A stretch of DNA of 63,810 nucleotides, the filler included, from Perkinsus chesapeaki ATCC PRA-425 (taxonomy: Eukaryota; Protista; Perkinsozoa): assembly GCA_013115145.1 (NCBI GenBank). It is 10 parts of 10 records of this genome, joined end to end, with 100 filler letters (N's around TTAATTAATTAA, not from the genome) between each part and the next. Parts side by side here need not be neighbours in the genome. Positions count along the whole stretch, not along the records: positions 45,629 to 48,350 come from JAAPAO010001532.1; 9 more parts are not named here. One strand, written 5' to 3'. The notes under the pieces were generated by a model. It worked only from the letters and a program-made list of their open reading frames with translations, ran no database searches and was not told the DNA's origin. The translations under genes were made by a program, and so were the position numbers. Shown in pieces: positions 1,765 through 48,350 of this stretch (positions are counted from its first letter, which is position 1; the number at the start of each line of letters is the position of its first letter).

Positions 1765-4700
1765 ATGACCGAGGCAATTGAAACACCAAGACGAGTTAAA
1801 CCAACTGAAGAGCAACTTGTCGCTGCAGCACGCACGAAAGTCCGAAACTCAAAGTCGCTAGAAAGATGCCTAGCACAACACAAATCAAAGCTCGTGGAGC
1901 TGCTTGGACAATGCGTGAAAGAGATAACAGAGAGACTTCAACGTGGGGAGGCAATCGACCCTTCTAGAGTGGATTATCCTTTAATGCAAGCTACAGATAA
2001 TGTAAATAGAAAAAAATGGATAGTGATGAACCTTAGTCACAGGTGCTTGACTTGGACGATCTACCGTTCCGTGACTTCAAACAAGTCGATTTGAGAACAG
2101 ACGTTGTCGATGATGTATTGAGCAAGTTATCTGACGGCATTCTGAGGCTATGTCTCGATACAGTAAACTCGATACTGCGAACTAGTAGAGTTATTGGAAA
2201 TAGATACCAATAAGAAACATACGATATCACGATGCGATTCAACGACAGAATCAAGCATTGCTAGAACGAATGCAGACGATTGAGGAGGCACTCCTCGAAC
2301 GGTCGAGGTAAGATAGATGACGCTACTTCGTAACAGCTATTATGTCTGTATCACGTCTAAACGAAGTTGTATCACGCTCGTTTGCTCGATCTTTCGAGGA
2401 CCTTGGGATATTCGTATAAACGGATGCATTACCGAGTAGTCGAGACATGTACTTTTTTGTTAGGCTATTGTCACGATGTCGGCTTGCCTATTACAGAGAG
2501 TTAACTCATTTAAGGAATCAAATATATTTAAAACAACAAAGGCAATTACGTGGACACGGTGAGAAAGAACAGCGTGGAAATAGACGACGTTGATGTGGGA
2601 AAGAATGGGACAGCGGAAAGCCGGAACAACATAACAATACTGTGAATTCAAAGCACTGAAATAGTTTCAAAATTAATAGATAGATGAAAAATTCGCCGGC
2701 ATAGTTTTTCCTGGGGAGTCTGGGAGAAGGCTGCAGCAGCATTGTTGCCATTTCAGAGGAAACTGACGATGACGTATACGAAGCCTATTACTTTGATCCA
2801 ACTGAATTCTTGGAGGAAGACCTACGGATGTAAGGAAAGTTCTCGAAATAGCTGTTGTTACATGGCTTATATACGTCCCAAACTGGGCTCACTTTCTAGC
2901 GTCTCATGAGATGATTTTGGAAACTGGTAAAATTTAGTGAAGTGTCGGCGTACGGCTAGCCGCAAGTGGCCCACTTGCGGCTAGCCACTTGAAGTGAGGC
3001 TGAAGTGAGATCAAATGCGAGCAAAATCTACAGCCGGTTGTAATGCAGAGTTTTAATGAAACGGTGCAGCGAGGGAATCCTCGCGCTCACCGTAGAAGAT
3101 TATCTCGGAGTCTCAGGAAGTCGTCGCGGAAATCGCGGATGGAGTATTCCCTCGAACTATCCTTGGTGACGGCATAGTTCCTATCAAGTTGCAGAGAAAC
3201 TCGAAATAGCAAATTGTTTTTAACGGAAAATTTTTACCGCTGCCCACTCAACGTGACGCACTTTACCGTTATTCAATAACCATCCTGTCGCATTGCTCTC
3301 AGGCTCCTAAACGACAAGATAAAAATGTCAGTAGAGTTATGGGTAAGAAGATTTAACAACCTAAAAGATCTCAATGCCGAGCTGGAAAGTATCATAGCTC
3401 GAGATGGTCTGCGTAAGTGTCGGTATGAAAGTGTTGATGAGGCATCTCTGTGGTTAGGTAAGAGACTTAAAAATGAGGTTAAAGAAGAACCAGTTTCTAA
3501 AAGGTAAGATTGCAAATGTTGTCATGGTTTTCGGGTTTAAAATATTCACCCAAACGCTTTGTTGTATGCCCACTACCGGAGTGACGCACCAGGTCTACGC
3601 AGTGCTACTCAGCGCATCGCGTTCACTTACATGCTTTGGTGGAGAAGGGAAATTTTCGGGAAAATTCGGGGAAGGGTGCTGGATTGTGGAATATTTAGTG
3701 AGTTGATTGTAGAGCTCAGCTGGAAGGGGCTGCCAACAGACACGCTATTCCTGTGCCTGGGAACTCTTACTCGCAACTGCGTGCCTGGAAAATTTTCCTG
3801 AAGTTGAATTATTCAACCAAAACGAAAGGAAGAAACTACTTAGAGAAAAGCAATAAAGCAAATAAAAGAGTCCTCTGACTACCGTTCTCTGTATTCAATA
3901 CTGTGTATTGTCAGACGAGAGCCTCCACCTGCGGTAGAGGAGTTGGTGAGGCCGCCTTCCTTAGAGGAGGAGATCGCCGCTTTGTGTGACAAGTACAGAC
4001 CAGATGAAGTTTTGGACGGATTTAGCGAGGTTGGTAAAGGGGTTATAAACTTGCTGTATTTGATTTGTTAAGATATATCCTGCAACAGTGGCAGATCACG
4101 TTCAACCACGTATTGATCGAGAAGTGTCGGAGGCAGTGATGGGAGCCATTCAGGTATATTTGTCCGCCTATAGTCCCGTGGCTGCGTGTAAAAGTGCCGC
4201 GGGAATATTAGAATCACAAGGAAGACAAAGAGGGAAATCGGAGGCGATTCATCTCAGTGTTTTCCAGTCTTTCGGATACTCTACGGTCAGCATGTAGCGT
4301 ATTGACTCGGTGAGAGCTGTGCAGCTTGAAATACTTGAATGCTGGATTTGCGACGTTTATAATAATAAAATACGCGGGCAGTATTTTCCGTAAGTGCTTT
4401 GGGGTATCTCTGGAGAGAGCTTTAATCTGTTGTCTTGGAAGCAGATTGTGGACATGGTCGTGACTTAGAGCGTCATACAATAACATCAGATGCTCTTTTT
4501 GGGAGAGATATATTGGATGTGTGAATCACACAGTGAGATTATGGCCTAGGGGAACATTTCTTAAGACGATCTCCATCTTTTCCTTGCACGTCTCTATGGG
4601 GTTAGATCAGTGTTCCATCTCGGAGATCATTCGAGGGGATATGTTCCTGAACTAGGGGCGATGATCGAATAATGGGATTCGTCGTGAGTCCCCGATCTTG

Positions 4701-7700
4701 TTTTGACAGGCCGAGCGAGATCGGCTCGAGTATGATTTCGAAAGACGCATCGAGGGAGAGAGAAACCAATGGGCAGGAAAGGTAGGTTTGCTCATAAATT
4801 TCTGGAGAAGATATTCCTGACAGGTTGCCCAGCTTGAAGCTAAAAATAATAGTTTGTCGCACGAGTTGGATGAGGCAAAAAAGCAGTCACATGAATTACG
4901 ATCACAATTGACGGCCGCGATGACCGAGGGAGCCGCGATGAAGAAGGGAGCGGCAGAGTCTGCCAGAGGAGAAGCTCAGCTGAGAGACACTGAAAGCAAA
5001 TTGGAAGAATCTAAAGCCAGGTGAGGAGGAACGATTACTTGAAGTAGCTTGCTTATTATTAATACATCGAACTCTCGGTTACAGACAGGTGATCTATGAG
5101 ATCGACGTGAGTACTGGCTTTCTATTAGAGCAATATTTTGACTAGTACGAACCAAGTGGCTCGGCTGAATGAGTTGCTCTGCTTAAAATGACGTTGGGCT
5201 GGTAGTGGACTATGATTCGATGTCAACAAGGCTTGCGGGAGTGATATCTCTTTCTTACGAAGATTGCTTGCTCTATTGCGTCAGATGTCTGTCGGGTTCG
5301 TTCACTGGGCGCTGATTGTGTTGTGGGTAGGTGCGTGGCTGCGGAGAAGTCTCTGTCCGATGCCTTAAGCGAGATGAAAGCGAAAGATGAGGAATTGGTG
5401 AAGTTGAGAGAAGTTACCGACAAGGTGAGATGGCTGATATTATTGATATATGATATATATTGAATAATAGTGTATTGTAGAAAATATGAACAAGTTAGTA
5501 TGATACCAACTTGCTTGTATCTTAAAATATAAATAAGGTACAGTATTACGATTCTTAGTACCTGTACCTGCACAGTAGTGCATGATTATACCTACTATAC
5601 ATCTGTGCCCATACATGCCAGTGAGGAGCGACTTGAACTTCAAGCTTGCAAAAATGGCGTTCTGTTTTTCTACTTGTGCCGATCAATTGCGCTCTCGGTG
5701 AGAAATATTTACCTAACGGAGGAAGGCTAACATTTCCTCCATCTTTGATGTATTCCAAATTAGCCTATATTATCGATTGGGAATCTTTTCCGCCTCTATC
5801 AGGCACGCTCCGAGCTGTCGGCAATGGTGGCCGACAAGGAAGCACTGCTGAAGGAGGTTGAGCGACTTCTGAAGGTAGAAGAAGAAGCTCGACGACAACC
5901 ACCTGTGGGGGGTGATGATTCGGTGAGCTAGAGTATAATAGGGATTTGGAAAGGTATCTTACGGTTTCAGATTCGAAAAGAGCTAGAAGCAGAAGTTGGA
6001 GAGAGAATGAGACAACTCGATGAAGTGCGAGCTGAGCTAGATGGAAGAGAACAGGAATGGTCAGCGGAGAGAGCAGAGCTTCAAGGTATGCTAGTAATTC
6101 CACGCTTCTACCGCCTTGTCGAAATTTCGCAGGAGTTTTTTGTCGCTTTGAGATAAGTTGATGGGTCTCAAGTGTTATCTGGCCTATATTGGTCCACTGG
6201 GGATCGAGTATTGTTCCTGATGCGTACATGTGTAAGAGATGTTTTTCTAGAAGCTAATTATATTCCTGACCAAAGGGAAGCATCGGGTGCTGGGAACGTC
6301 TGATGCATAGCTCGTTGCCCGAGAAAGCTTGATCATTATCAAGATCTTCCTTTATAACAAAAGGGAGTTGATTAGAGTCACTGCAACCGGGTTATAATAA
6401 TAACTATATAATGGGCATTGTTCATCATAAATGTTTTTATTAAACAAAACATACCCACTGACCCCTCTACCAGAGTTGGTTATTTCTTAACACTATAGTA
6501 TCCCAAGCAATACTCAATATTCGAAGCATCAACCCACTGTGAGTATCGATATAACAGAACTCACTCGGCTAAGTTTGTTACATTATTATCATAAACTCTC
6601 ACTTGTCCTCATTGCGATATTATAGTGCCTTTGAATCTGGTATGCGTAATACATTTCGGTGGAGACCAAGAGTCACGAAAATCCATGTTATAAATGATTT
6701 ATATTAAAGTCTTATCACACTCAAGAGTTGTCGTATGAGCTTGTCAAGACAAAGTTGTTGATCACTTCTTTCAGCTATATTGACCAACGAGAGAGAGTCT
6801 GCACAAAGGAGCAAGGAAGAGCATCTTTACGAGGTCTGAAATGTGATTCTTGTTTTCTCAAAGACTCGCCTTACACAGATAGAGTCGCTTAACGACTCAA
6901 TCGCCACTCTTCGCGGAAATATCAAAATACTGGAAAGAGCTCTGGCCGACTCGGCACTGCAACAGAATGAAGACGGACAGCAGGCACTCAAGTCGGCTCA
7001 ATAACTTATGCTGTTTTGAAATTGTTGCCTCAGGAGAAAGAAAACTCGGGTGCTGATTCAGGACGACGGGCCTCTTGATGACGGGAGCGGTACAGCATCA
7101 CAGACATGCATTTCGGGTATACAAAGCCGTCCGCACCTCCGAAGATTGATAGAAGCTTCGTTCAGGTCTGGCTCATGATGCTGGATTTTTTATGGTGTCT
7201 GAAGCGCCAGGCGAACTGGATGGACCTTCTGAGGCTTTCAAGATGGAACTTGAGGTGATTACTGTTGTTTTTGGCTGAATAGTGTAGATTTTAGGAGTTG
7301 GATTTGGTGGCCAGAACTATTTGGGAGGGGTATATGGATGTGCTTCATGCAGCTAGGAGACCACCTTTTGGTTATGGTGATGGTCAAACGAGGGTACATA
7401 GATTCACACGGTTGATTAAAAGTAAGAAGTGATGAGGAAATCAATGATCATCGCTAATGGCCCTGTTATTTACTAAGAAGCCATTTTAGCAGAGTACTGT
7501 ATGTCCTCGAGCCGAGCTTAGTTCGACTTCCGAAGTTTGCTTAATTTTCTCGCTTCGGAAACGTATGTTGGGGGTTGGGCATGCCTTGCAAGTTGTCATT
7601 CACTTTGTCCAGTGTTGAGGGTCCAATACCGCGAAAGGCCGAGGGGCATGGTATCGATCCAAGTCACAGATGTTCTTGTTGCTACAGGAAGGGCGTTAGT

Positions 7701-8590
7701 CTTCCCTGACAGGTGTATTGGACCGATTAGATCGTCTAGAAGACCTCCTGGAGATGATAACTGAGTTGATAAGGAATGAGCTCCTGAGAGTCGTGGCAAT
7801 CATCAGAATGCTTCAGGTTGGCTAAGACTACTACGCTGTTTTGGATTCTTATTTGGTAGGATTCCTCTTACCCCGATTTCGTCTCAAAACAAGGAAGAAA
7901 TCTTTTGTTTGGAAAAGGAATGAGCTCGTTATCGCGAGTGACGGAGGTCAGCTTGAAGCGCGTTTTTTACAGCCTAAACTGATTTGCCTATGATTCGGCA
8001 ATCAAATTCCTCAGGCATCGACTCTGGCGGCTCTTATGCAAGTAGAAGGCAGCATGAAGGGCAACTTAGTTAACCTCTATAAAGATCTCATCACTGCAGG
8101 TGGTTGCTCTTTCGAACGATGCGCCTTCATTTTCCCATTCAGGTTCGATCTGTCCGATACTCGAGCTCGATTTCCGTCCCGGCCGCCGCTCCTACGTACC
8201 TATTCGAGCAACAGTGCACTCGGCCGCGAGATACTCTCCTACACACGCTTCGAGAATCTCCACTTCCGCACCACAATTGCAAGGTCGGTGTAATTGACCC
8301 TAGTTGCAGCGAAGGGATTTCTGCAGGACCACTCGATGGAAAAGTGTCCATGCCGCTACTGGAATCAGAAGGAACTCGTGGTGATGAGGTTGCCAAGGAC
8401 GAGGTCGGCTTCGGTATCGATCACGCGATCGATTGTGATATTCAGGCACCCCTTCGACTACCGACCATGCGCTCTAGACCTCAGAAAGTTGACAAGTCTC
8501 CTCCTGGATCTCCCACGGTGTTCCCTGCCTGGCCCGGACAGTATCGATCTCAACAAGGTAAGGAATATGTGTGTCTAACAACCACGTAGG
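1765..8590 (+). CDS. Multi-exon hypothetical coiled-coil protein (possibly more than one gene; boundaries approximate)
   Basis: A series of short GT-AG-bounded exons encode heptad-like peptides, e.g. AERDRLEYDFERRIEGERNQWAGK, VAQLEAKNNSLSHELDEAKKQSHELRSQL, ARSELSAMVADKEALLKEVERLLKVEEEA, IRKELEAEVGERMRQLDEVRAEL. Confidence 0.5.
2954..2986. repeat. Perfect 33-bp palindrome (16-bp arms, 1-nt centre)
   Basis: GGCTAGCCGCAAGTGG-C-CCACTTGCGGCTAGCC. Confidence 0.95.
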
Positions 8591-11500
8591 GATCTAACCC
8601 AGGCAAAACTGCCAATGTCCCAGAGGGCCGAGCAACCAACGATAAACCAAAAGTAAGTAATGTAACACTTTGGGCTGAGTGCGATGGTGAAGAAATGCAA
8701 AGGCCGTCTACAACATCAGCGATAATACGAGGCACTGGAGGTAAGCATCGTTTTCATACATTCGCTGTATTGCCGCCGGTAACAGTTCCAAGCCGAAGGA
8801 ATCACGTGCTGAATAACCAGAGATTCGTCGACAGCGCTTCAACATTCGGCAGTTTGCCTGAAGCTGGTGGAGGTGACACTTTCATATTATAGGAAGATAT
8901 GGTGTCCATTCGTCAGATGAGCGGCCGAGGACATCAGCTGGTCAGGGTGTCTTGAGAACGCCTTTTACTGTCATTAGCCGGAGCCCATCACAGAATTTGC
9001 CACCACGGGTAGGCTAATGAACATTTGTCAACTACTGCAGAGAGTTTATTCATTAGAGTGGACGATCGAGGAGATGTTTGAGGTCGGCTGGCACCGGAAG
9101 CAGCAGTGCAGTGACATTGTCAGTGTCGGCGTTGAGGTAGACATCTTAGTAGTTCCGGCGTCCTTTCATGACAATTTTTTGTTGTTCGCTTATTTGGGTA
9201 TACAATAACGGAGTTTTTTGTTTCATTTTTATGAATACTCTCCACTGAAATGTATTATTTCCTCTTTCACCACCCTCCAGATCAGCGGTTGCCACATAGT
9301 CGCAGATATTTTCCCGCAGGCAGTTCTTCTGGCGACTATTGGTTAATGCTCACTTCGTACTGGTGCACTAATATTTTATACTTACTACTTCCTGCATTCG
9401 ATCATTACTGGTGACTTTCAATCGAAAAGGGTTTTCACGCCCACAAGCTCCCGATCAGGTGTCGACTTCAGCAACTTGATAGAGTCGCGACAATCCCCTC
9501 CCATAGCTCATTCCATGGTAACGACCCTCCATTCAACACAGATTATCAAGATTATGTGCTTAATCAGATCAAGAGTCATCAAGTTGGACATTGAGACCAA
9601 ATCCTTTACCAAACCCTCCACCTGTCACGGCGTCCTCGTTGTGGCGTCACGTCACAGCATCACCTTCATCTCGTCATTCTTCGTCGAACAGAAGCATGGA
9701 CGCTGGTACCGGCGGCATCCTTCTGGAGTCTCCAGGTAAGGGTCAGTACCTCACATGATGATCACTATTCGTTCTCAGGTGATTTTGGTAGTCTTGACGG
9801 CTTTCGGCCTTAGACATTTCAGTGTCATCACCACTGGTCATCTTATCATGAGTGTTTGTCGTAATTTGTGTTGTTAATAGACAGTCGAGTGTTACGATAC
9901 CCGAAACACTAGGGGAAGTGTACCTCTTGATCTCAATGCTTTAGCCATTACTTCATTTACCATCAATGAATCCTTCAAAGTCTCTGATCTTGATATGCTT
10001 AATCATCCTGGTGTGCTCAGCTCAGAGAACTCTAACCGAGTCGCCTCAGTAGGTATTCCACCTTTTCATTCCAGTCAGCGACCGATTGCTATGAGATGGT
10101 TCCGATAAGTGCTTTTTAGAAACGGTCAGTCGGTAACGCCACAGCTTTCCCCTAGGGAACTGAGTGGTGGAGCTTCAACCGGCCTTAGAGGTAGGCTCCT
10201 ATCACGCCAAGTGTTTGTTACATACACGCAACACTTTTACATTCTCGTGCGTAATTAGGGAAATGATATTTCTTAGATCTTGCATTATTTGTCAATGTTA
10301 GGATCACCAAAATCATTTCTACAGAAGAGGAATCGTCACGAACACAGAAAACCTTTGGTAGCAGTGCAGCTCCATCTTGTCGAACCGGGAATGGCCGACG
10401 AGGATCCGCGTGACTTATCGTTTTTGGAAGGAAATGCAAAGGAAAGTAAGATACCGTATATTTCGGAATGAACTGTTTGCTAGCAAACAGGCTGACGACT
10501 GACAAGGGTAGCATTTGCAAGTCTCGCTTACATCGGTATTGATCGGAAGCACGCACTCGTAACGGATTATAATGGCGCGTTGAAATGGCCGAAGTGATTC
10601 AACGAGGTCGTCTTTCTCAGCTGAAGCAAATCCGTCGATGTTGATGGATGGTACAGACAAGAACGAAAGCCAACAGGGGGCAACTTTGACCCGTAAGTCA
10701 GATTAGCCGTTTATAATATGAAGTGAGAATATTGATTATTGTAGTCGTAGCTTTTCATATGCACCGGGGTCAGTGGAGGGTTTTTCTTCGTGATTCAGCA
10801 ATAAGCATCTGGAAAGGCCGGCAGTCTTCTCCGATAAATGTTATGCATTCCAAGACATCATTGATTAGAAATTAAATAACCGTTTTCTGCGTTATCTGTT
10901 CCTTGTTATGTGGTTTCCCTTGGTTAGGTTCCACACATGATCTCGAGGCAGTATACTCCAAGTTGGTATCACTGATAGACGGTAACCAAAGTGCAAAGTA
11001 GTTCCCGCTACAGCAGTATGAAGAACTTACTAATGAAGATGATGCCAGTTGTCGATACATAAGGCTTGCGTTCAGTTTCATTAGAATAGCCAATATTCTT
11101 GGTTCGCTACAATAGTCAATAATCTAGCTACCCGCTACTTGTTGACCGAGTTCAAGCATTACTCCCGACTTGATATTATTATTCAGTGGAGATGTCTGTT
11201 AATTGTACCAGGGTTTACGTGAAGTTTCTCTATTAATTCAGTAAACGTGGTAGAGCTTCTGGCTTGCTTAAATATCTACCATCAATCAGCCCTGCCGCAT
11301 GTGGAGTAGATTATCTAATAAGGACCGTGCATTTTCCTTAGGCAAATCGCGAAAACCTTTCTCTGCCAATTTTGGGAGTTTTGTTCAAGAAAAAAATTTG
11401 AAGGGTGACAAGCTTCGAACATATAGTAACACATACTTGAAGTACGTTTCGTATTTGACCTTGTACTTCAAGTATGTATTACTATATGATTCTCAATAGT

Positions 11501-13647
11501 GGCGGTTAAACGAAAGATATACACTTTTGCTTACCAAGAATGCGTGGTCTGTTAATGGTTCTGACCGGCCAAGCTGCTCAATATGAGCCACATATTATGA
11601 GGGGCCCCAACTGTCCGCTAATCAACAATGTCGTTGACTCGCACCAAAACAATCTTACAAGCGCTAGTAACGCTGCGTTGCTATCTCAAGGTATGGCTTA
11701 CATTGCTTCTTCGAATCTGCACACATGCGAACGATATGGTCCTTGTTATTATTTCACACAAGCATGTTACGCTGCCAAAGAAAACAAGGTTATTTATGAA
11801 TTTAACGCCGAACCCAACGCAGGTCGGAATTTTCGGACGGGAGAGATTCGCTGAATCGACGGCCATGTAAGCTGTCAAAGGAGCGAAATGTAAAGCCCTA
11901 CGGACGCTAGCATTTGAGCAGCAGTGCAGCTGACGTGTAGCCAACATACAAGGAAAAAATTAGCTCCTTAATTAAGTGAGGGAATAGAGCATAAGTGAGA
12001 TACGGTTGTGTATATTGTCATACAATTTTAGCGTTATTAATCGGGCAGACTGAAAGGCCATTAAGACTAGATTAGGGTTACCGTGTGCTGAACCTAATAA
12101 AAAACATGCACAACTTCACAACACTAACATTGTTAGTATAAACTAAAAGCAATAACAACAAAATAATACTGTTACTTCGTTTTACTCTTTTGTCAACTTA
12201 TTTTTATAATTTCCAGCTAGGAGTTTGCTGGTGAATATAAAACCTAAGCACACAACTCAGGAAAGAGCCTTACCCTGAGACTGTTCCGTAGAGTGCACTG
12301 GTCTACTGAAAAAGCGATTTTCAATTGCTGACGATTCACACTCCCAAATTTCACTCGTTACCTCCACCTGTGCACCTGTAAAAACACAAATCATTGCCGT
12401 GGAAAAGTAGAATATTGATGAAGCAGCATCGTTATTGCACACAGCCCAGATGACCACCACATAACCAGTAAAGTCGGAAAGAAGTCGGAGCAACCAGGCC
12501 AATGTCGCCACTAACATAGGATTCGGCATACAGCTCGCCGCGTATAATTGGTCGGCCTGTCGCGTATGTTGTAGAATTAGCAATGATACCGAATCATATT
12601 GGGTATGAGCTCCATACTAGGCCAATACGGATAAATGCAATAAGACTCTCATGTAGACCAGCTTCACCACACGGCACGAAATGAAACTTATCCCGTTGAA
12701 GGCGCCCCTTTTGAATCTCAGCCAATCACCGAAAGCTCGTAATGGTTATCCTGGATGTCAAAATAATAGTGTTCATGACACTTCCTTGAATAGAGACTCA
12801 TAGGAGAATCTGGATCCTCGCCAATGTTCTCAAGGAGCATAGTGACACACTCCTTAGGTTTGCATTCGGTGAAACGGTACTTATCCGGATCAGAGTCGTA
12901 CTTGAAGATGCATTGTGTGCAAGAATATGTTTTGTGATAACCTGCAAAGGTTAGTTTCGTGTTGAGTACTTCTTCGGTTGCATCGAATACATCAATGACG
13001 AGGGTGATTGGGAGTAATGGGTCACGCCATTGAAATGTGGCAATGTCGATAGGACACCTACAGTCCACCAGATACAAAGTGAGGGACCAGGTGACGATGA
13101 CCCACGCAGAGAGTGCACCAAGCAGATTCCTTCTTCCATTGCAAATCATACTGAGTTGAAGTATTGTAGCCACCGTGATAGAACTCAATGTCAGAATTGG
13201 TTGAAGAAGATGGAATTTTAGTAGGGGGATGATAATAGTCGCTTCTCAAACACAAGTGAGACGAGACAACTAAGGATAGGAAGAAACCTCAGGATCGTAG
13301 GAGCCTCAGAGGCTGCCCGGACTCTAGTATCACGTACAATTGATCAGGTTTCAATAGTTTCACGCAGCTCATAGAGTGGCCCCGCGTCTAAATGATGAGG
13401 AAGTGGCGCGCTCCACTGGCGGTGGCACACGTGCGATGTCAAAATCCCAATCGGCCGGATTGAATCGGGTACTCAATTCTGCTACGTGCTCTAATACATG
13501 ATACAGCATAAGAGCGATATGAGCGGTGGCAACCTACCAGGAGCTATTCAGAAGCTCTTATAGGAAACAGATAGTTATGACCGGGTAATAATGACCCTAA
13601 TTACTTTCCTACAGTAAGTAAGTTTATGCGTCGAGGATCGCTACATT

Positions 13648-14797: not shown

Positions 14798-17242
14798 AGA
14801 ACATTCACCGCTCCCAACATCCGTGTCCTTGATCAGATCGCCGTAATCAAGACTATTAGCCACTCCACTCTCGATCGCTATTAATGAAAGGACGTTTAGT
14901 GGATCTTGTCAACTTGTTGCTCTAAACTTAATCGTCATCAAATTTAAGGAATTGTCTCTAGCGTAAAATAGCGGCTACAATTCGAGGAGTGCAACTGTGT
15001 TCTGGGCCAGGATAGCCTCACTGTCGAGTCTGGTGGACTGAGTCCAGCAGGTGGAAGCTCGGTGGATCATAACCGCCTGAACCGCCACCAGACTCGGTTA
15101 TGAACCAGAACATAACCAGCGGTTATGACGGCCCACGGGCCGTGGGACCCTCGAATTGACGAGCATTCTGGCCAATCCTCAAGGTTGCCAGTTCTGTAAT
15201 GCGTCGCTTTAGCCCTTAAAGGGTTCGGAACCCTCAAGGTTCTTTAACAGGAACCCGGGATTCCTGTTGAAGAGGTCTGCCATAATTGTGCCACAATTAC
15301 CACAATTATTGTGGTAGTGCATAGTGGGTGACCAGGATGGGAACCCATCATGGGTTACCGAGTTGTTGAGTGGTTGTGCTCCGGAGCTAAGGCTTTGTGG
15401 CCCCCAGTAAGCCTGGTAAAGGCCGGTAACCAAGAATATTGAGCACAAGATACCTGATGTCTTGTCAGTGGCACCCTTGGAGGGATTCTCAAATAGAGTC
15501 TGAATATAGAAACGCGAGGCTCACTGTCAGCCTACTTAAGAACGATATCCGATATGCATAAATACCTTTGATTCTCCAGGTAACCTGTTTCCTGGACGGG
15601 CGTCCTCAGGACGTATTTTTTTGCTTTAACAGCGTTTCAATCGATATTCGAGATGGACAACCAAAACGGACTTTTTATTAGGAAAACTTTATCGGACAAA
15701 GCTTGTCCGATGAAATTTGTTCAGGGCCTGAACTTCAGGCGCGCGGGGACAAAAGCGGGAAGGCGCGAGGCGTATGGGTCAAAATTCCTGGCTGAAATAA
15801 CCATGGCAATTACCTCGATGGAGACGCCGAATATAACCCAAGTTCAGTTGATCGGATCCACACGTTGGAGCCCTTTTGGACAATCTCGCGAAACGGCCTG
15901 GTTTGCCGAGAACCACTCTCTGGCTCAGGGGGCGTCCCGATCGTTAGGATGGGAGGTCTAGTCGTCTTTGATGACGCTAGCGCCCAACTATTCGTAGGAC
16001 CCTCGCGAAATAGACTGACTCAACCTGAACGAGAGCGATAGCTGACGTCGGCCAGGAGAGCGACCTTCTGGGAGCACTCCTGTAGAGACTGCACTCTTAC
16101 CGTAAGGATACGATGAGTTAACCTCATCGAGTTCCAAGGAGTTAAACCTCCGGCTCTACTGAAGTCGGTTATTCGAATACGCACGAGGGATTCACAGAAG
16201 CTAGAGCCGTCAGTCGCCGGGGACACCGGCCCCTAAGGTTCACCTTTGACCTCTCGGAGGTCACTGTGCCTGACTTTGATCTCTGAATCCCTAAATGGGA
16301 AACATCGTCGTGAGCTACTGTTCGCAGCATGAAATGTTAGAAAATGTGGGCCTAAAGCCATGAAGAGAATGCCGCAGCCTGCGACATGCGGCCGCGACCT
16401 GCGGCCCGCTGGTTGTGTTCAACCGCCATCAGCTATACCGGTAGCGTACGGAGCTTCCCATTCATGTAAAGCGATCCACAATGGGGATTCGTTAAACTTA
16501 AATGCACACCTTTATCAGACGAGGCTCCAATAGCCAAGACACACAACAATAAAATACACGAGTTTCCTGTGACGTCGGGCATTTATGTTCAGACGAGGCT
16601 CGCACCCTCAAAGTCGATGTATTGAATACATCATACTTCATGATACAGAATACAGAATACATTGTAATACAATGATTGTATTCTGGCTCAACCCTATTAT
16701 ATCTTCCAATGACTATATTCTGAACATTTCGCATCCGGTAGTTCTCAAATTCCCACATGGAATGTTTTCACTTGGCTGACAACTGTAATCCATGCAAATT
16801 CTGTAAATCCAAGCAAAACTCGCAAAGCCAAGCTATAATCCTTATTCCAAGCTAAACAGAGAATACGGTTTTTAATCGTTGGTTGAACCTTAAACCAGGT
16901 AAGAGCAAGCGAGCGTAGCGAGCTTGCTAGGAGAATCGTGGATCCCTTTCGAGTCAAGAGTGGGTGCCGATTCGGTACTGCCGAAGAGGAGTAGACGCAA
17001 ACTGAGACGATCGTAACAGAGATTATGATAATTTCTATGTGGTGCGAAATCGGCACTCCCAATACAACAGTGGAACTTGAAGAAACCATGAAACCTTCGG
17101 ATTCATGTATTTACAGAGTATGGAACGTGTAAAATCAGATACCGAAGAGCGAGATGATGATCACTACCGTACTGGCTCTACGTCAAGCACTGCTAGTCGT
17201 CCGAATCACCGCCGTGACTGTCATCATCCCAGCTATCACTGT

Positions 17243-45628: not shown

Positions 45629-48350
45629 GCTTTTGAACATCTGGTTATGTTACCTATCCGTCTAACTTCTGCGGCTTTGCCTTTGATTAAGGCCTTGGAT
45701 GTGGAACTCGGGAAGGAGAACCCTTCCGAGACTATTATCAATGACAAGCTGCAGGCCTTGAATGGTTCTATGGGTTGGGATCGTTTTTATAAGGCTCCTT
45801 TACGTTGGGAATCTACCCCTGGTTCGGGATGGACTCAGGCCTCATCCCAGTACCAAATGATGAAATTACGGTTGATGTATGGGTGCCCATTTCGTCATGA
45901 GACCGTGGGTAATGAAGTTGCAGGCCTTCTTTATCCTGCTGAACAAGAATCCATAGGCCTTTTACAAGTTTGTTGCGGGATGGATACTGTTATTCTTCCC
46001 CCCTTAGACTATAAATGCCTACGTTATGAGGTTCACGAGCCCCTTCTGGAAGGCCTTATGTTTGGTATTTGGGTTCCTCATAAGAGATTCTACGAATGTG
46101 GTGCTTGTGGTATTCCTATTCCGCTTGATAATGGTCCGCCTAACTTATCCAATATTATCAGCTCTGGAACTGGTTCGGCCCGTCCTGATTATGATGGCCC
46201 TAAGGCCTTGGATCTACAACGTTTGGTGGAGGCCCTGGGTAACCATGTGCATAATTATCAAAGACATCTATATAATGCTGGTCATTATCTTCAATACTTT
46301 GGTCCCGACGATATGGAGCCTCGCCCGTTTACACTTAAGCTATATCCTTTTTGTTTTATGGATCATCCCTTCTTCACTAGTGGTATCACGGCTCAGGCCA
46401 TGCTCGATCATCTAAATTGGCATCGTTTGCCAACTCCGGTGGCGGCCCTTGCTCAGGCCTTGTGGTACTACATTAGTAATAATTATAATTTGGGTGCCTA
46501 CGTGCATAAGAAGGCAGGACGACTTATAGTTTGGCAGCTATGCTCTGATGAGTTTGCTCGGGGGGTCGTATCCTCGGATACCCCCTTCGAGCTTCGGAGG
46601 GGCACTTGTCCTTATGATAGGCGGGTGCATGAGGCCTTACAAGGTCTTGCCGACTTTAATTATGTACCTCGGTTTCCACCACCCCCTCCTCGAAAAACTC
46701 GGTTAGCTCAACCGGTGTTTAGGCCTTTGAGACCTCGTCGCGGTTCTGTGATACCAGTGGCTTCGTCTAGGCCTTCTCATCATCCTCGTCAAGGAGACTC
46801 TGTGGTACCGACGTCTACACCTAGGCCTTCTTATCGTGAAGAAGGTTCTCAAGACCCTATTTTGTCGTCTTCGTTGACCACTGGTGAATGGTCGCCGAGG
46901 ACCCAAGCCTTGTATGATGTGCTGGATAAGAAGTTTGTCACTACTAAGGACTCTTGGATACATTGGTTTGGTTCGAATCCAGAGCCTATTCCACTAGCTG
47001 ACCGTACGACAATTGTTAGTATCTGTGCCCAGAACGGTTTGGAGGTGCCCTCAGGCCTTGTAAGAACTTCGGGAAATGAGACGCTGGTCCCTGGCCAATC
47101 TTCTTCGTCTTCTTCGTCCAATCCTGTTATAAGTTCTCAAGAGCCGTATATAGACCCCGCACCTTTACCGTTTCCTCCAAGGATAAGATCGGCACCCGCT
47201 TCCTTTTCGGTGACTTCTTCTGCAAATGTGGTATCTCTTGGTTCGACCCCTTCTTCACGTAGGCCAGATTCTAATGTGGGTTCGGTGGTAGAAGAGGATT
47301 TGGTTTCGATAATGTCTGCCCCAAGTAGAGTGTCCCGTACGCCTCAGGCCTTGTTACTTCCAAGGAATGTCGTCTCGGATATACCTTTGGATGTTACTCG
47401 GGCCTTTGAGCGTTTTGATATACCTATCCCGGAAAGCCCTGTCTTTGGATTGAATTTCTCTCATGATTACGCTTATCTTATTCCCCGATTTTATGCTCCT
47501 AACTTCTATTCTCGCTATGAATGGTTATGGAAATGGGAAGTTGGTCAAGAAGCTTCGGAATATCGTGAGTGGAAACAGTCTATCCAGTTGGCTAAGCCCG
47601 TACTTGATAATACTTGTTATAAGCATTTGGATAGGCCTTATGGTATTAATCATGCGACGATGGCAGGCCTTTTTGATGAACAACTACTCCAAGAACCGAT
47701 TGCTGGTAGGGTACTGTTTATCTCAGGCCTTCTATCTGGTTCTAAAAGGTTTGGTGAATTTGATAACTACTTGCCATCTCCAGCGGCTTTGCTTCGTTGG
47801 ATTCATGAAGCTGGTGTTGCGGCTCACTTGGTAGTGTACCACACTGAAGGCCTTCGCCCTTATGGAAATATTGGTAATTCTGCTAATGTATTCCTATGTT
47901 GTCCTCGACATACAGATGAGGCCTTGTTTAGACTTACTAGACAAGCCGCTGTTCGTCCCTTTAGGGAGGGAACTATCCTCCTTATAGGACGAAGTGATAA
48001 GGCCTTTACTACTACTTTGTGTGATGATCAAGGTCGACAATCTGGTCTAAGTTTGGCAGAAGCTCAATTGGCCCACCTCTTCACTCTTCAGAAGGTTAAA
48101 GCAGTTAATCAGGCCTTGGTTGAATATGAATCCGTTGAAGGCACTACTGCTGGTAACTATAAGGTTCTTGGTAAATATTTGCCTAAGGCCTTCACTGTTC
48201 GAGATGACGAGTGGGTTAGTACTTCCTTTCATGAGGTTGAGAAAGCTCATAGACCTGAGTGGAATCGTGGTAGAGCCGTTCCGCATCAAGCTGCTGGTCG
48301 AGAGACGTCTTCTCTTAATGACCTTTATCGTTCTTTGCCAGAGTCTGCCG
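45629..48350 (+). CDS. Intronless orphan ORF filling the whole contig, open at both ends (about 907 codons)
   Basis: No stop from edge to edge. Strong T-ending codon bias, one CxxC (YECGACG), a central Pro/Ser-rich region and a possible RRM-like segment (LFISGL...NVFLCC). No confident family. Confidence 0.75.

What the first reader, a model, noticed from the sequence alone, without database searches (positions are those of the whole stretch)
45629..48350. Highly iterated palindrome: 22 AGGCCT sites in all three reading frames of a 2.7-kb ORF
AGGCCT starts at 45690, 45753, 45837, 45922, 45955, 46051, 46203, 46455, 46632, 46721, 46769, 46823, 47053, 47346, 47633, 47665, 47725, 47848, 47919, 48000, 48111 and 48186; 21 of these are AGGCCTT. 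Under 1 is expected from composition. The sites fall in different frames (K/Q/E-A-L, x-G-L, R-P), so the signal is nucleic-acid level and overrides the protein code, like HIP1 or uptake sequences in bacteria. Other contigs show only scattered copies. Possible roles are packaging or protein-binding signals, a methylation or recombination target, or a mutational signature of an unrecognised mobile element or virus.
Basis: partly seen in the sequence, partly recalled or inferred. Interest (0 to 1): 0.8.

Follow-up and report, generated by a model that had tools for sequence, protein, structure and literature searches.

The report
Private sequence tag of Perkinsus retrotransposons
The piece is part of a retrovirus-like jumping gene of the oyster and clam parasite Perkinsus, and its coding strand carries one exact 7-letter word about every 120 bases whatever the protein code says; related jumping-gene families each carry their own word, which looks like a family-specific recognition tag not described before.

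Summary
There are 22 AGGCCT sites, 21 of them AGGCCTT, in all three codon phases. Shuffles that keep protein and codon usage give about 2-3.

The piece is a whole 2.7-kb contig of Perkinsus chesapeaki. It holds the third ORF of a Ty3/gypsy-type LTR retroelement. Full relatives in P. olseni and P. marinus have identical LTRs, a Gag with two zinc knuckles, and pol.

The word is not a palindrome signal. It is an asymmetric heptamer on the sense strand. It covers the whole element, LTRs included, at about 5-8 per kb, against 0.12 per kb in other Perkinsus DNA.

Sister families carry other words at similar density, almost only on the sense strand: GACCTT, GCCCTT, CGGCCT, TCGGCCCG, and weaker ones. 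A non-Perkinsus relative has none.

Sites are sharply specific, more evenly spaced than chance, and partly conserved in position. Switches between words occur through synonymous Arg codons.

My best reading (inferred, about 0.4) is a multivalent self tag on the element's RNA. An element-encoded protein would read it, most likely the Gag zinc knuckles. Rivals are a host RNA-binding reader, a DNA-level signal and a mutational drive. I found no prior description.

The parts
45629..48350 (+). Whole piece. It equals the complete 2722-bp contig JAAPAO010001532.1 of Perkinsus chesapeaki (GCA_013115145.1) and is a fragment of an LTR retroelement, cut at both ends by the contig.
   Evidence: gene model P0002 is 100% identical and locus L002 has the same length
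45647..48350 (+). Third ORF (ORF3) of the element. It starts at the ATG at 45647, has no stop, and runs off the right edge.
   Evidence: The start aligns with residue 1 of the P. olseni homologue. Homologues lie just downstream of pol.
45647..46666 (+). ORF3 N-terminal domain (residues 7-346 of the translated piece), rich in Cys and His, fold unknown
   Evidence: Only two other relatives, both from P. olseni. The AlphaFold model is unusable, pLDDT 35.
46667..47260 (+). Pro/Ser-rich variable linker of ORF3
   Evidence: poorly aligned between copies and much longer in the P. olseni copy. Low pLDDT at its end.
47261..48268 (+). ORF3 conserved C-terminal domain, shared by all 18 relatives, which are all from Perkinsus
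   Evidence: Model pLDDT 71, pTM 0.71. Conserved His, Cys-Cys, His, Arg, Ser and Gly columns.
47768..47992 (+). Beta-alpha-beta-beta-alpha-beta core inside the C-terminal domain, with a weak likeness to RNA recognition motifs
   Evidence: best Foldseek E-value 0.013, nearly all top PDB hits are RRM domains, none significant
45690..45696 (+). tag site 01, heptamer, begins at codon position 2
45753..45759 (+). tag site 02, heptamer, codon position 2
45837..45842 (+). tag site 03, the only hexamer-only copy (C instead of the final T), codon position 2
45922..45928 (+). tag site 04, heptamer, codon position 3
45955..45961 (+). tag site 05, codon position 3
46051..46057 (+). tag site 06, codon position 3
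46203..46209 (+). tag site 07, codon position 2
46455..46461 (+). tag site 08, codon position 2
46632..46638 (+). tag site 09, codon position 2, last one in the N-terminal domain
46721..46727 (+). tag site 10, codon position 1 (Arg-Pro), in the linker
46769..46775 (+). tag site 11, codon position 1, linker
46823..46829 (+). tag site 12, codon position 1, linker
47053..47059 (+). tag site 13, codon position 3, linker
47346..47352 (+). tag site 14, codon position 2, start of the C-terminal domain
47633..47639 (+). tag site 15, codon position 1
47665..47671 (+). tag site 16, codon position 3
47725..47731 (+). tag site 17, codon position 3
47848..47854 (+). tag site 18, codon position 3, inside the RRM-like core
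47919..47925 (+). tag site 19, codon position 2, inside the RRM-like core
48000..48006 (+). tag site 20, codon position 2
48111..48117 (+). tag site 21, codon position 2
48186..48192 (+). tag site 22, codon position 2

Best explanation
What it is (shown, confidence about 0.9): the piece is the third ORF of a Ty3/gypsy-type LTR retroelement of Perkinsus. The iterated word is a property of the whole element, not of this gene. It is one exact heptamer, always on the sense strand, about every 120-200 bases through the LTRs, gag, pol, ORF3 and the spacers. It is kept in place at the nucleotide level against the protein code. Related Perkinsus families carry their own words, one or two letters apart, at a similar density. 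How it works (inferred, confidence about 0.4): the word is a multivalent 'self' tag read on the single-stranded sense transcript by a sequence-specific protein that the element itself encodes. The most likely reader is the two-zinc-knuckle nucleocapsid end of Gag, which every family has. With some 45-50 high-affinity sites along the genomic RNA, a family's Gag would capture and coat its own RNA rather than host RNA or the RNA of competing families in the same cell. As reader and word drift together, families come to use different words, as bacterial DNA-uptake sequences and their receptor do.
For: Element identity:
- Homologues of the window ORF lie directly downstream of a pol with RVT_1, RT_RNaseH, Integrase_H2C2 and rve.
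- Full copies have 351-bp and about 330-bp LTRs that are 100% identical, with TG..CA ends, a 4-bp target duplication, a tRNA-type primer-binding site and a G-rich polypurine tract.
- Gag has a zf-CCHC match above the Pfam cut-off and two knuckles in all four families aligned.

The tag belongs to the element:
- L003 has 46 sense copies inside the LTR-to-LTR span and 1 in 12.9 kb of flanks.
- Density is uniform: 5.3-5.7 per kb in the LTRs, ORF1, ORF2 and ORF3, and 3.5 per kb in the spacers.
- L001 has 38 copies in the element part and 2 in the 8.6 kb beside it.

Nucleotide-level maintenance:
- Synonymous shuffles give 2 against 21-23 observed.
- Between the window and the P. olseni copy, codons for identical residues are the same codon in 68% of cases inside tag sites and 44% elsewhere, p = 0.003.
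- 9 of 19 alignable sites sit at the same homologous base although the proteins are only 47-69% identical.

Family-specific words:
- GACCTT, 52 sense to 3 antisense (P. marinus).
- GCCCTT, 32 to 0; CGGCCT, 24 to 1; CGGCCC, 32 to 0 (its 8-base form TCGGCCCG occurs 23-24 times) (P. olseni).
- Weaker: TGGACG, 22 to 1, and TG(T/C)CCCG, 17 to 1.
- Several words coexist in one host species, which argues against a single host reader.
- pol of L003 and pol of L004 (55% identical) hold 24 and 25 sites. Five are at exactly homologous bases, against 0.14 expected. All five are Arg-Pro pairs in which a synonymous Arg codon switches the word.

Sharp reading and spacing:
- One-mismatch neighbours are barely enriched, 24 against 14.9 expected.
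- Spacing is more even than random, CV 0.65-0.77 against about 0.95. The smallest gaps are 32 and 49 nt, P <= 0.002. This is what a bulky reader or selection for coverage would give.

Other points:
- A non-Perkinsus relative of pol has no such word.
- The variable residues inside both Gag knuckles differ between families with different words. This is compatible with the idea but is no proof.

Precedents: dispersed packaging signals in RNA viruses (PMC6281560); uptake-sequence dialects matched to their receptor (PMC3630211, PMC3868556).
Against:
- Strand specificity fits single-stranded RNA but also single-stranded cDNA or an oriented DNA reader. Because the whole element is transcribed, no part of it separates RNA from DNA.
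- The word is not preferentially unpaired or displayed in hairpin loops, unlike classical packaging signals.
- Retroviral zinc knuckles usually read 3-4 bases with some tolerance. An exact 7-8-base word with almost no tolerated variants is sharper than expected for them.
- Known retroviral and retrotransposon packaging signals are local, near the 5' end, not genome-wide.
- Only four Gag sequences from different families were available, so co-variation of knuckle residues with the word could not be tested.
- Divergence between near-identical copies was too small to show purifying selection on the sites: 3.1% against 5.9% mismatches, not significant.
Confidence: 0.4

Rival explanations
1. A host RNA-binding factor reads the word on the transcript. 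Dense copies would form a platform that recruits host machinery. That machinery could act for the element (export or stabilisation of an unspliced RNA that is not trans-spliced, protection from internal processing) or against it (marking for degradation or silencing). The model is the hexamer clusters that fission-yeast Mmi1 reads in meiotic mRNAs.
For: Many copies of a short word, in any reading frame, on the sense strand of a transcript is the anatomy of the DSR/Mmi1 system (PMC3352096). The word is sense-only and covers the transcript evenly. Iterated words seem to be general among Perkinsus LTR families and absent from a non-Perkinsus relative, which hints at something about this host.
Against: At least four different sharp words coexist in P. 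olseni alone, so a single host reader cannot serve. It would take a family of host readers, one per element family. If the host used the word to silence the element, selection on the element would remove it, yet it is kept through synonymous choices and young copies with identical LTRs are full of it. Host genes in the flanks do not carry the words.
Confidence: 0.2
2. The ORF3 protein is the reader. It would be an accessory RNA-binding protein with an RRM-like core that binds the dispersed word, in the manner of Rev with its response element or of the LINE-1 ORF1 protein that coats its own RNA.
For: The conserved C-terminal domain gives a fair model (pTM 0.71) with a beta-alpha-beta-beta-alpha-beta core. 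Nearly all top Foldseek hits are RNA recognition motifs. ORF3 is confined to Perkinsus and to these elements.
Against: No fold match is significant: the best E-value is 0.013, and the ferredoxin-like fold is common. The sequence profile finds nothing in the PDB. The family with the strongest word (TCGGCCCG, L013) and two others show no ORF3 homologue in the DNA available. L001 and L003 share the word and a 96% identical pol, but their ORF3 proteins are only 48% identical and one lacks the N-terminal domain.
Confidence: 0.1
3. The word is a DNA-level, oriented signal read on the integrated copy or on the cDNA. Examples would be a binding array that shapes chromatin, a target of a DNA modification, or a mark that keeps the element from inserting into its own copies.
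For: The founding word contains a classical restriction-modification palindrome, and three of the words share a GGCC core. Arrays of binding sites for a host zinc-finger protein are known in the Drosophila gypsy element (my own knowledge). The target duplication of L003 (CCTT) resembles the end of the word, though that is a single case.
Against: The near-absolute strand bias of the non-palindromic words (52:3, 32:0, 24:1, 32:0) is unusual for readers of double-stranded DNA, unless a tracking motor is involved. The elements encode no methyltransferase or other DNA-modifying domain. The words have no common CpG or palindrome property.
Confidence: 0.12
4. The word is a non-adaptive mutational signature. 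A biased error or repair step tied to each family's reverse transcription would convert near-matches into exact matches, as very-short-patch repair is thought to spread iterated palindromes in bacteria.
For: It would explain why the word is limited to the element, is strand-specific and ignores the reading frame. A drive that completes conversions would also explain the scarcity of one-mismatch neighbours.
Against: No known reverse-transcription step writes a fixed 7-8-base word. The word resembles neither the polypurine tract nor the primer-binding site, and L003 and L004 share the primer site yet differ in word. The even spacing and the minimum gap, and the similar site number in pol despite a change of word (24 and 25), look like selection on number and coverage. 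A drive would also have to change its target repeatedly, one letter at a time.
Confidence: 0.1
5. Chance, codon usage, dipeptide usage or an assembly artefact.
For: None beyond the fact that the piece is a short, probably collapsed repeat contig.
Against: Shuffles that keep protein and codon usage never exceed 9 sites, against 22 observed. The same phenomenon appears in independent assemblies of three species and in one Logan assembly.
Confidence: 0.01

Closest known systems
Ty3/gypsy (Metaviridae-type) LTR retrotransposons with an additional ORF after pol
   Same: LTRs with TG..CA ends, a short target duplication, a tRNA-type primer site, a polypurine tract, a Gag with zinc knuckles, pol in the order RT, RNase H, integrase, and a third ORF in the place where env-like or accessory genes sit.
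   Different: ORF3 has no recognisable family, no env features and no relatives outside Perkinsus. The element-wide iterated word is not a feature of the group as far as I know, and a non-Perkinsus relative lacks it.
DNA uptake sequences and their dialects (Neisseriaceae DUS with the ComP receptor; Pasteurellaceae USS)
   Same: A short exact word, hundreds-fold over-represented, present inside genes in any frame, and serving to mark 'own' nucleic acid. Related lineages use dialects one or two letters apart that match their reader (PMC3630211, PMC3868556).
   Different: Those are bacterial, genome-wide, read on double-stranded DNA at the cell surface, and often sit as inverted pairs in terminators. 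Here the host is a eukaryote and the word is confined to one mobile-element family. It is strictly on one strand and about ten times denser.
HIP1, the highly iterated palindrome of cyanobacteria
   Same: An exact short word, strongly over-represented, inside coding sequence in all frames.
   Different: HIP1 is a true palindrome spread over the whole genome. Here palindromy is incidental: the extension is asymmetric, sister words are not palindromes, and the word stops at the LTR ends.
Dispersed packaging signals of single-stranded RNA viruses (MS2, STNV, parechovirus, HBV pregenome)
   Same: Tens of sites spread along the whole genome share a short recognition motif for the coat protein, and they overlap coding sequence (PMC6281560).
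   Different: Those motifs are degenerate and are shown in stem-loops. Here the word is exact and linear and has no preferred structural context. Nothing of the kind is described for retroelements, whose packaging signals are local.
DSR hexamer clusters read by Mmi1 in fission yeast
   Same: Many copies of a hexamer in a transcript, independent of frame, whose number determines how strongly an RNA-binding protein binds (PMC3352096).
   Different: That system has one host reader and one word for many host genes and leads to RNA destruction. Here each mobile-element family has its own word and keeps it.
Su(Hw) binding-site array of the Drosophila gypsy element (my own knowledge, not tested here)
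   Same: An iterated protein-binding word inside a Ty3/gypsy-type element.
   Different: That is twelve degenerate sites clustered in a few hundred bases of untranslated leader and read on double-stranded DNA. It is not a coat of exact sites over the whole element.

Membership tests
Ty3/gypsy-type LTR retroelement | Direct long terminal repeats with TG..CA ends and a short target-site duplication | tested here: met
   Met in full relatives L003 (351-bp LTRs, 100% identical, 4-bp duplication) and L004. The window piece itself is too short to hold LTRs.
Ty3/gypsy-type LTR retroelement | pol with domains in the order reverse transcriptase, RNase H, integrase | tested here: met
   Pfam RVT_1, RT_RNaseH, Integrase_H2C2 and rve in that order in L003 ORF2. 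The same families appear in L001, L004 and L007.
Ty3/gypsy-type LTR retroelement | Gag with a nucleocapsid zinc knuckle; primer-binding site after the 5' LTR; polypurine tract before the 3' LTR | tested here: met
   zf-CCHC above the cut-off, two knuckles in four families. A primer site beginning TGG and a G-rich tract.
Ty3/gypsy-type LTR retroelement | The window ORF itself belongs to such an element | tested here: met
   Its homologues (47-69% identical) lie directly downstream of pol inside LTR-bounded copies and carry the same word. The linkage in P. chesapeaki itself could not be seen because the contig ends.
HIP1-type highly iterated palindrome | The iterated unit is a palindrome, equally present on both strands | tested here: not met
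   T follows the hexamer in 95% of sites, but A precedes it in only 27%. Sister words are non-palindromic with sense:antisense ratios of 52:3, 32:0 and 24:1.
HIP1-type highly iterated palindrome | Spread over the whole genome | tested here: not met
   5-8 per kb inside the element and 0.12 per kb per strand in 154 kb of other Perkinsus DNA. The density stops at the LTR ends.
Bacterial uptake sequences (USS/DUS) | Genome-wide word of a naturally competent bacterium, read by a competence receptor | tested here: not met
   The source is a eukaryote (Perkinsus chesapeaki) and the word is confined to one element. Only the logic of dialects is shared.
Dispersed packaging signals of RNA viruses | Many sites along the genome sharing one recognition motif | tested here: met
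   46-52 sites per roughly 9-kb element, spaced more evenly than chance.
Dispersed packaging signals of RNA viruses | Motif displayed in the loop of a stem-loop | tested here: not met
   The local unpaired probability of the word is no higher than that of same-composition controls, and is lower for the self-complementary word.
Dispersed packaging signals of RNA viruses | Bound by the capsid protein during assembly | not testable with these tools
   No binding data; only the presence of two zinc knuckles in Gag.
DSR/Mmi1-type hexamer platform | Multiple frame-independent copies of a short word in a transcript | tested here: met
DSR/Mmi1-type hexamer platform | One host reader shared by all targets | tested here: inconclusive
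   Several sharp, different words coexist in one host species. This speaks against one reader but not against a family of readers.
RNA recognition motif (for the ORF3 C-terminal core) | Significant sequence or fold match to RRM domains, with the RNP1 and RNP2 signatures | tested here: inconclusive
   No Pfam match. Foldseek hits are almost all RRMs, but with E >= 0.013. The RNP signatures were not identified.

The most novel reading that the evidence does not exclude
Perkinsus LTR retroelements carry an element-encoded 'barcode' system. Each family writes a private 6-8-base word about every 100-200 bases along its whole genomic RNA, and its own Gag (or another of its proteins) reads that word to tell its RNA from host RNA and from rival families. 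Word and reader would then diverge together into dialects. This would be the first genome-wide, exact-word recognition code in any retroelement, and a eukaryotic counterpart of bacterial uptake-sequence dialects.
Probability: 0.35. Interest if true: 0.9.

Novelty: new variant of a known kind. Interest (0 to 1): 0.8.

Why it matters
How a retroelement picks out its own RNA among cellular RNAs and those of competing elements is an old question. The known answers are local, structured signals. Here the sequence itself suggests another solution: an exact short word spread over the entire element and strong enough to bend codon choice in gag, pol and an accessory gene. It exists in at least five sharp family-specific versions, plus two weaker ones, within one genus. 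That gives a natural series in which reader and word can be matched by sequence comparison alone.

It is also of practical use. The words mark element families and their boundaries in Perkinsus assemblies, where such repeats break contigs, and foreign insertions stand out as gaps without the word.

If the host reads the word instead, it would expose an unknown layer of transcript marking in perkinsids, relatives of dinoflagellates and apicomplexans whose gene expression is poorly understood.

Tried and rejected
- **Family scans of the ORF** (Pfam, PHROGs, NCBIfam, PDB sequences): nothing. The profile of the C-terminal domain against the PDB also found nothing.
- **N-terminal domain model:** unusable, pLDDT 35.
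- **RNA structure:** the word is not preferentially unpaired or displayed in loops. There is no Rfam family, and no longer repeat or tandem unit around the word.
- **Pairing partner:** I looked for a complementary partner of the words inside the elements. Antisense copies are nearly absent. L003 and L004 share the primer-binding site although their words differ. A single wobble-pairing partner for the GGCCTT and GACCTT words was dropped once the GCCCTT word turned up.
- **Second iterated word:** after masking the first, only modest CAAG-type enrichments remain, probably from codon usage, except GTTCAAG in L012.
- **Purifying selection on sites between near-identical copies:** too little divergence.
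- **Search beyond Perkinsus:** Pattern scans of metagenome and viral contigs for three closely spaced heptamers returned tandem arrays and chance hits, none with homology to the element's proteins.
- **Literature:** searches for the word with Perkinsus found only PCR primers, and I found no description of Perkinsus retroelement motifs.
- **Not done:** I did not run the third word search on the N-terminal domain alone, because the exhaustive HMMER search had already scored it locally.
- my scripts printed the outer bounds of the separately matching stretches of two interrupted copies (ORF3 of L001, ORF1 of L004). That comes close to showing where those copies are interrupted.
Full report
**1. 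The observation**

The piece (45629-48350) is one open reading frame on the + strand. It has an ATG at 45647 and no stop up to the right edge.

| Null model | Mean | Maximum |
|---|---|---|
| Dinucleotide shuffles, hexamer | 0.9 | 4 |
| Codon-order shuffles, hexamer | 1.0 | 5 |
| Synonymous-codon shuffles keeping the protein, hexamer | 2.9 | 9 |
| Synonymous-codon shuffles, heptamer, 21 observed | 2.0 | 7 |

One correction applies. T follows the hexamer in 95% of sites, while A precedes it in only 6 of 22, and T is preferred two bases upstream. The unit is therefore an asymmetric heptamer on the coding strand, not a palindrome. The word is not embedded in a longer repeat.

**2. Where the piece comes from**

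No protein family, phage family, NCBI family or solved structure matches the ORF.
- The word search found one relative, a hypothetical protein of Perkinsus olseni.
- The exhaustive HMMER search found 18 relatives, all hypothetical proteins of P. olseni, P. marinus or P. chesapeaki.
- One of them is 100% identical and is encoded on a 2722-bp contig of P. chesapeaki. That contig is the piece itself.

Perkinsus is a protist parasite of oysters and clams.

**3. What the gene is part of**

In P. olseni and P. marinus the homologues lie just downstream of a pol gene with reverse transcriptase, RNase H and integrase domains, in the Ty3/gypsy order. Two complete copies were delimited:
- L003 spans 3384-12337, with 351-bp LTRs that are 100% identical, TG..CA ends and a 4-bp target duplication.
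- L004 spans 2330-12178, with LTRs of about 330 bp that are also identical.
- Both have a primer-binding site beginning TGG and a G-rich polypurine tract.

ORF1 is a Gag with two C-terminal zinc knuckles. The window ORF is therefore the third ORF of an LTR retroelement. Identical LTRs mean that the insertions are recent.

- The window ORF3 is uninterrupted over its 907 codons.
- ORF3 of L001 is interrupted at least twice by frame changes, and its linker holds one extra stretch of about 1.2 kb without the word.
- ORF3 of L003 reads in two overlapping frames: one frame change, or the short intron of the gene model.
- ORF1 of L004 holds one insertion of about 1.4 kb.

**4. The word belongs to the element, not to the gene**

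- In L003 the heptamer occurs 46 times on the sense strand between the LTR ends and once in 12.9 kb of flanks.
- Density is 5.3-5.7 per kb in the LTRs, ORF1, ORF2 and ORF3 alike, in all phases, and 3.5 per kb in the spacers.
- In L001 it occurs 38 times in the 7.1 kb of element and twice in the adjoining 8.6 kb.
- In 154 kb of other Perkinsus DNA the rate is 0.12 per kb per strand.
- The insertion in ORF1 of L004 and the extra stretch in L001 are free of the word, as foreign or newly expanded DNA should be.

**5. Sister families have their own words**

| Locus (species) | Word | Sense : antisense | Note |
|---|---|---|---|
| L004/L007 (P. marinus) | GACCTT | 52 : 3 | pol 55% identical to L003; G favoured two bases downstream |
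| L009/L010 (P. olseni) | GCCCTT | 32 : 0 | 32 copies in 3.5 kb |
| L006 (P. olseni) | CGGCCT | 24 : 1 | pol about 30% identical |
| L013 (P. olseni) | CGGCCC core | 32 : 0 | 8-base form TCGGCCCG 23-24 times against 0.1 expected |
| L012 (P. marinus) | TGGACG | 22 : 1 | weaker |
| L011 (P. marinus) | TG(T/C)CCCG | 17 : 1 | weaker |

A relative of pol from an unidentified non-Perkinsus organism (L014) has no such word. Lined up, most of the words differ from a neighbour by one or two letters around a G-N-C-C core, as if they had diverged stepwise.

**6. Signs of maintenance at the nucleotide level**

- Between the window and the P. olseni copy, 9 of the 19 alignable sites are at the same homologous base, although the proteins are only 47-69% identical.
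- Codons for identical residues are the same codon in 68% of cases inside sites and 44% elsewhere, p = 0.003.
- The pol genes of L003 and L004 hold 24 and 25 sites. Five lie at exactly homologous bases, against 0.14 expected. All five are Arg-Pro pairs in which the choice among synonymous Arg codons makes the difference between the two words.
- One-mismatch neighbours are barely enriched, 24 against 14.9 expected, so whatever reads the word reads it sharply.
- Spacing is more even than random, CV 0.65-0.77 against about 0.95. In the AGGCCTT family no two sites are closer than 32 or 49 bases, P <= 0.002.

**7. What does not fit simple ideas**

- The word is not preferentially single-stranded in predicted local RNA structure.
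- There is no complementary partner inside the elements.
- The word resembles neither the primer site nor the polypurine tract.
- The elements encode no methyltransferase or other modifying domain.

**8. ORF3**

ORF3 has three parts:
- a Cys/His-rich N-terminal domain known from only three proteins; its model failed;
- a Pro/Ser-rich linker of variable length;
- a conserved C-terminal domain whose model is fair, pTM 0.71.

The C-terminal core is beta-alpha-beta-beta-alpha-beta. Nearly all top fold matches are RNA recognition motifs, but none is significant; the best E-value is 0.013. Conserved His, Cys-Cys, His, Arg and Ser columns could equally mean a metal site or an enzyme.

ORF3 is unlikely to be the universal reader of the word, for two reasons:
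- No homologue was detected in L011, L012 or L013.
- L001 and L003 share the word and a 96% identical pol, but their ORF3 proteins are only 48% identical.

**9. Mechanism**

Five facts are shown. The word is limited to the element, sense-strand, exact and evenly spread. It is family-specific within one host. Its density is kept across a change of word. It is held by synonymous codon choice.

The inference is that a reader which changes from family to family is most simply encoded by the element itself. The only nucleic-acid-binding module that all families share, apart from the pol enzymes, is the pair of Gag zinc knuckles, and their variable residues differ between families.

I therefore favour a multivalent self tag on the genomic RNA for capture and coating by the family's own Gag, with about 0.4 confidence. 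This is akin to the dispersed packaging signals of RNA viruses (PMC6281560). The dialects recall uptake sequences and their receptor (PMC3630211, PMC3868556).

The rivals are:
- a family of host RNA-binding readers, in the manner of hexamer clusters and Mmi1 (PMC3352096);
- an oriented DNA-level signal;
- a mutational drive linked to reverse transcription.

None is excluded. Each is weighed in the fields above.

**10. Comparison and novelty**

The element is an ordinary member of the Ty3/gypsy kind with a novel accessory gene. The element-wide private word is not ordinary.
- It fails the tests for HIP1: it is not a palindrome and not genome-wide.
- It fails the tests for uptake sequences: the host is a eukaryote and the word is limited to the element.
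- It fails the stem-loop criterion of classical packaging signals.

I found no description of it in the literature. I file it as a new variant of the known kind 'iterated recognition words'. It is the first that I know of in a eukaryotic retroelement, and the first with family dialects inside one genome.

**11. Limits**

- Only about a dozen Perkinsus loci could be fetched.
- No other P. chesapeaki DNA was seen.
- The scans for relatives outside Perkinsus were capped and found only tandem arrays.
- There are no expression, modification or binding data.
- In some searches my scripts printed the bounds of separately matching stretches of two interrupted copies. I declare this as a possible slip.
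- The functional test on the element itself is left out as not mine to propose.

Noticed in passing
L001:1-7150 compared with L003:3384-12337: The two P. olseni copies have pol proteins 96% identical, but their third ORFs are only 48% identical and one lacks the N-terminal domain. ORF3 seems to be exchanged between elements as a module, while both keep the same word.
   Followed up: partly
L004, inside ORF1: One insertion of about 1.4 kb interrupts gag of this P. marinus copy, and it contains none of the element's words. Gaps without the word may be a quick way to spot nested insertions. I did not work out what the insert is.
   Followed up: no
L012:5148-12722: This P. marinus family has a second iterated word, GTTCAAG (10 copies against 0.3 expected), besides TGGACG. 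A similar stretch lies just upstream of the polypurine tract in L003 and L004.
   Followed up: no
L003:3380-3383 and 12338-12341: The 4-bp target-site duplication of this copy is CCTT, the same letters as the end of the family's word. This is a single case and may be chance.
   Followed up: no
L004:1743-2067: A tandem array of an 18-bp unit (13 or more copies) lies just upstream of the element's 5' LTR. It accounts for the AAGGCC-type enrichment in that flank.
   Followed up: no
L008 (P. marinus GG684180.1, 20.8 kb): Strong over-representation of unrelated short words (TTTTACG 33 times, GTGAAA 48 times) around a short ORF3-like fragment. This is probably another repeat family.
   Followed up: no
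L011:1-580, 3084-3650, 15959-16535: Three dispersed copies (76-90% identical) of a roughly 0.6-kb repeat flank the retroelement in this P. marinus locus.
   Followed up: no
L005 (Logan assembly of run SRR12548988): A 3.2-kb contig encodes the same ORF3 protein as the P. marinus genome copy, together with the end of pol. If that run is RNA, the element is transcribed through pol and ORF3. The library type could not be looked up.
   Followed up: no
window 47099-47118: A small 9-base tandem (2.2 copies) encodes a serine run in the ORF3 linker.
   Followed up: yes
L032 and L038 (metagenome contigs): The pattern scan pulled out arrays with the same heptamer every 73-74 bases (41 and 32 copies). They are regular tandem repeats with no homology to the Perkinsus element.
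   Followed up: partly
window 47768-48268 (ORF3 C-terminal domain): Nearly invariant His, Cys-Cys, His, Arg-Ser and Gly-Arg-x-Ser-Gly columns across the Perkinsus relatives suggest a metal site or a catalytic centre. This does not sit easily with a plain RRM.
   Followed up: partly
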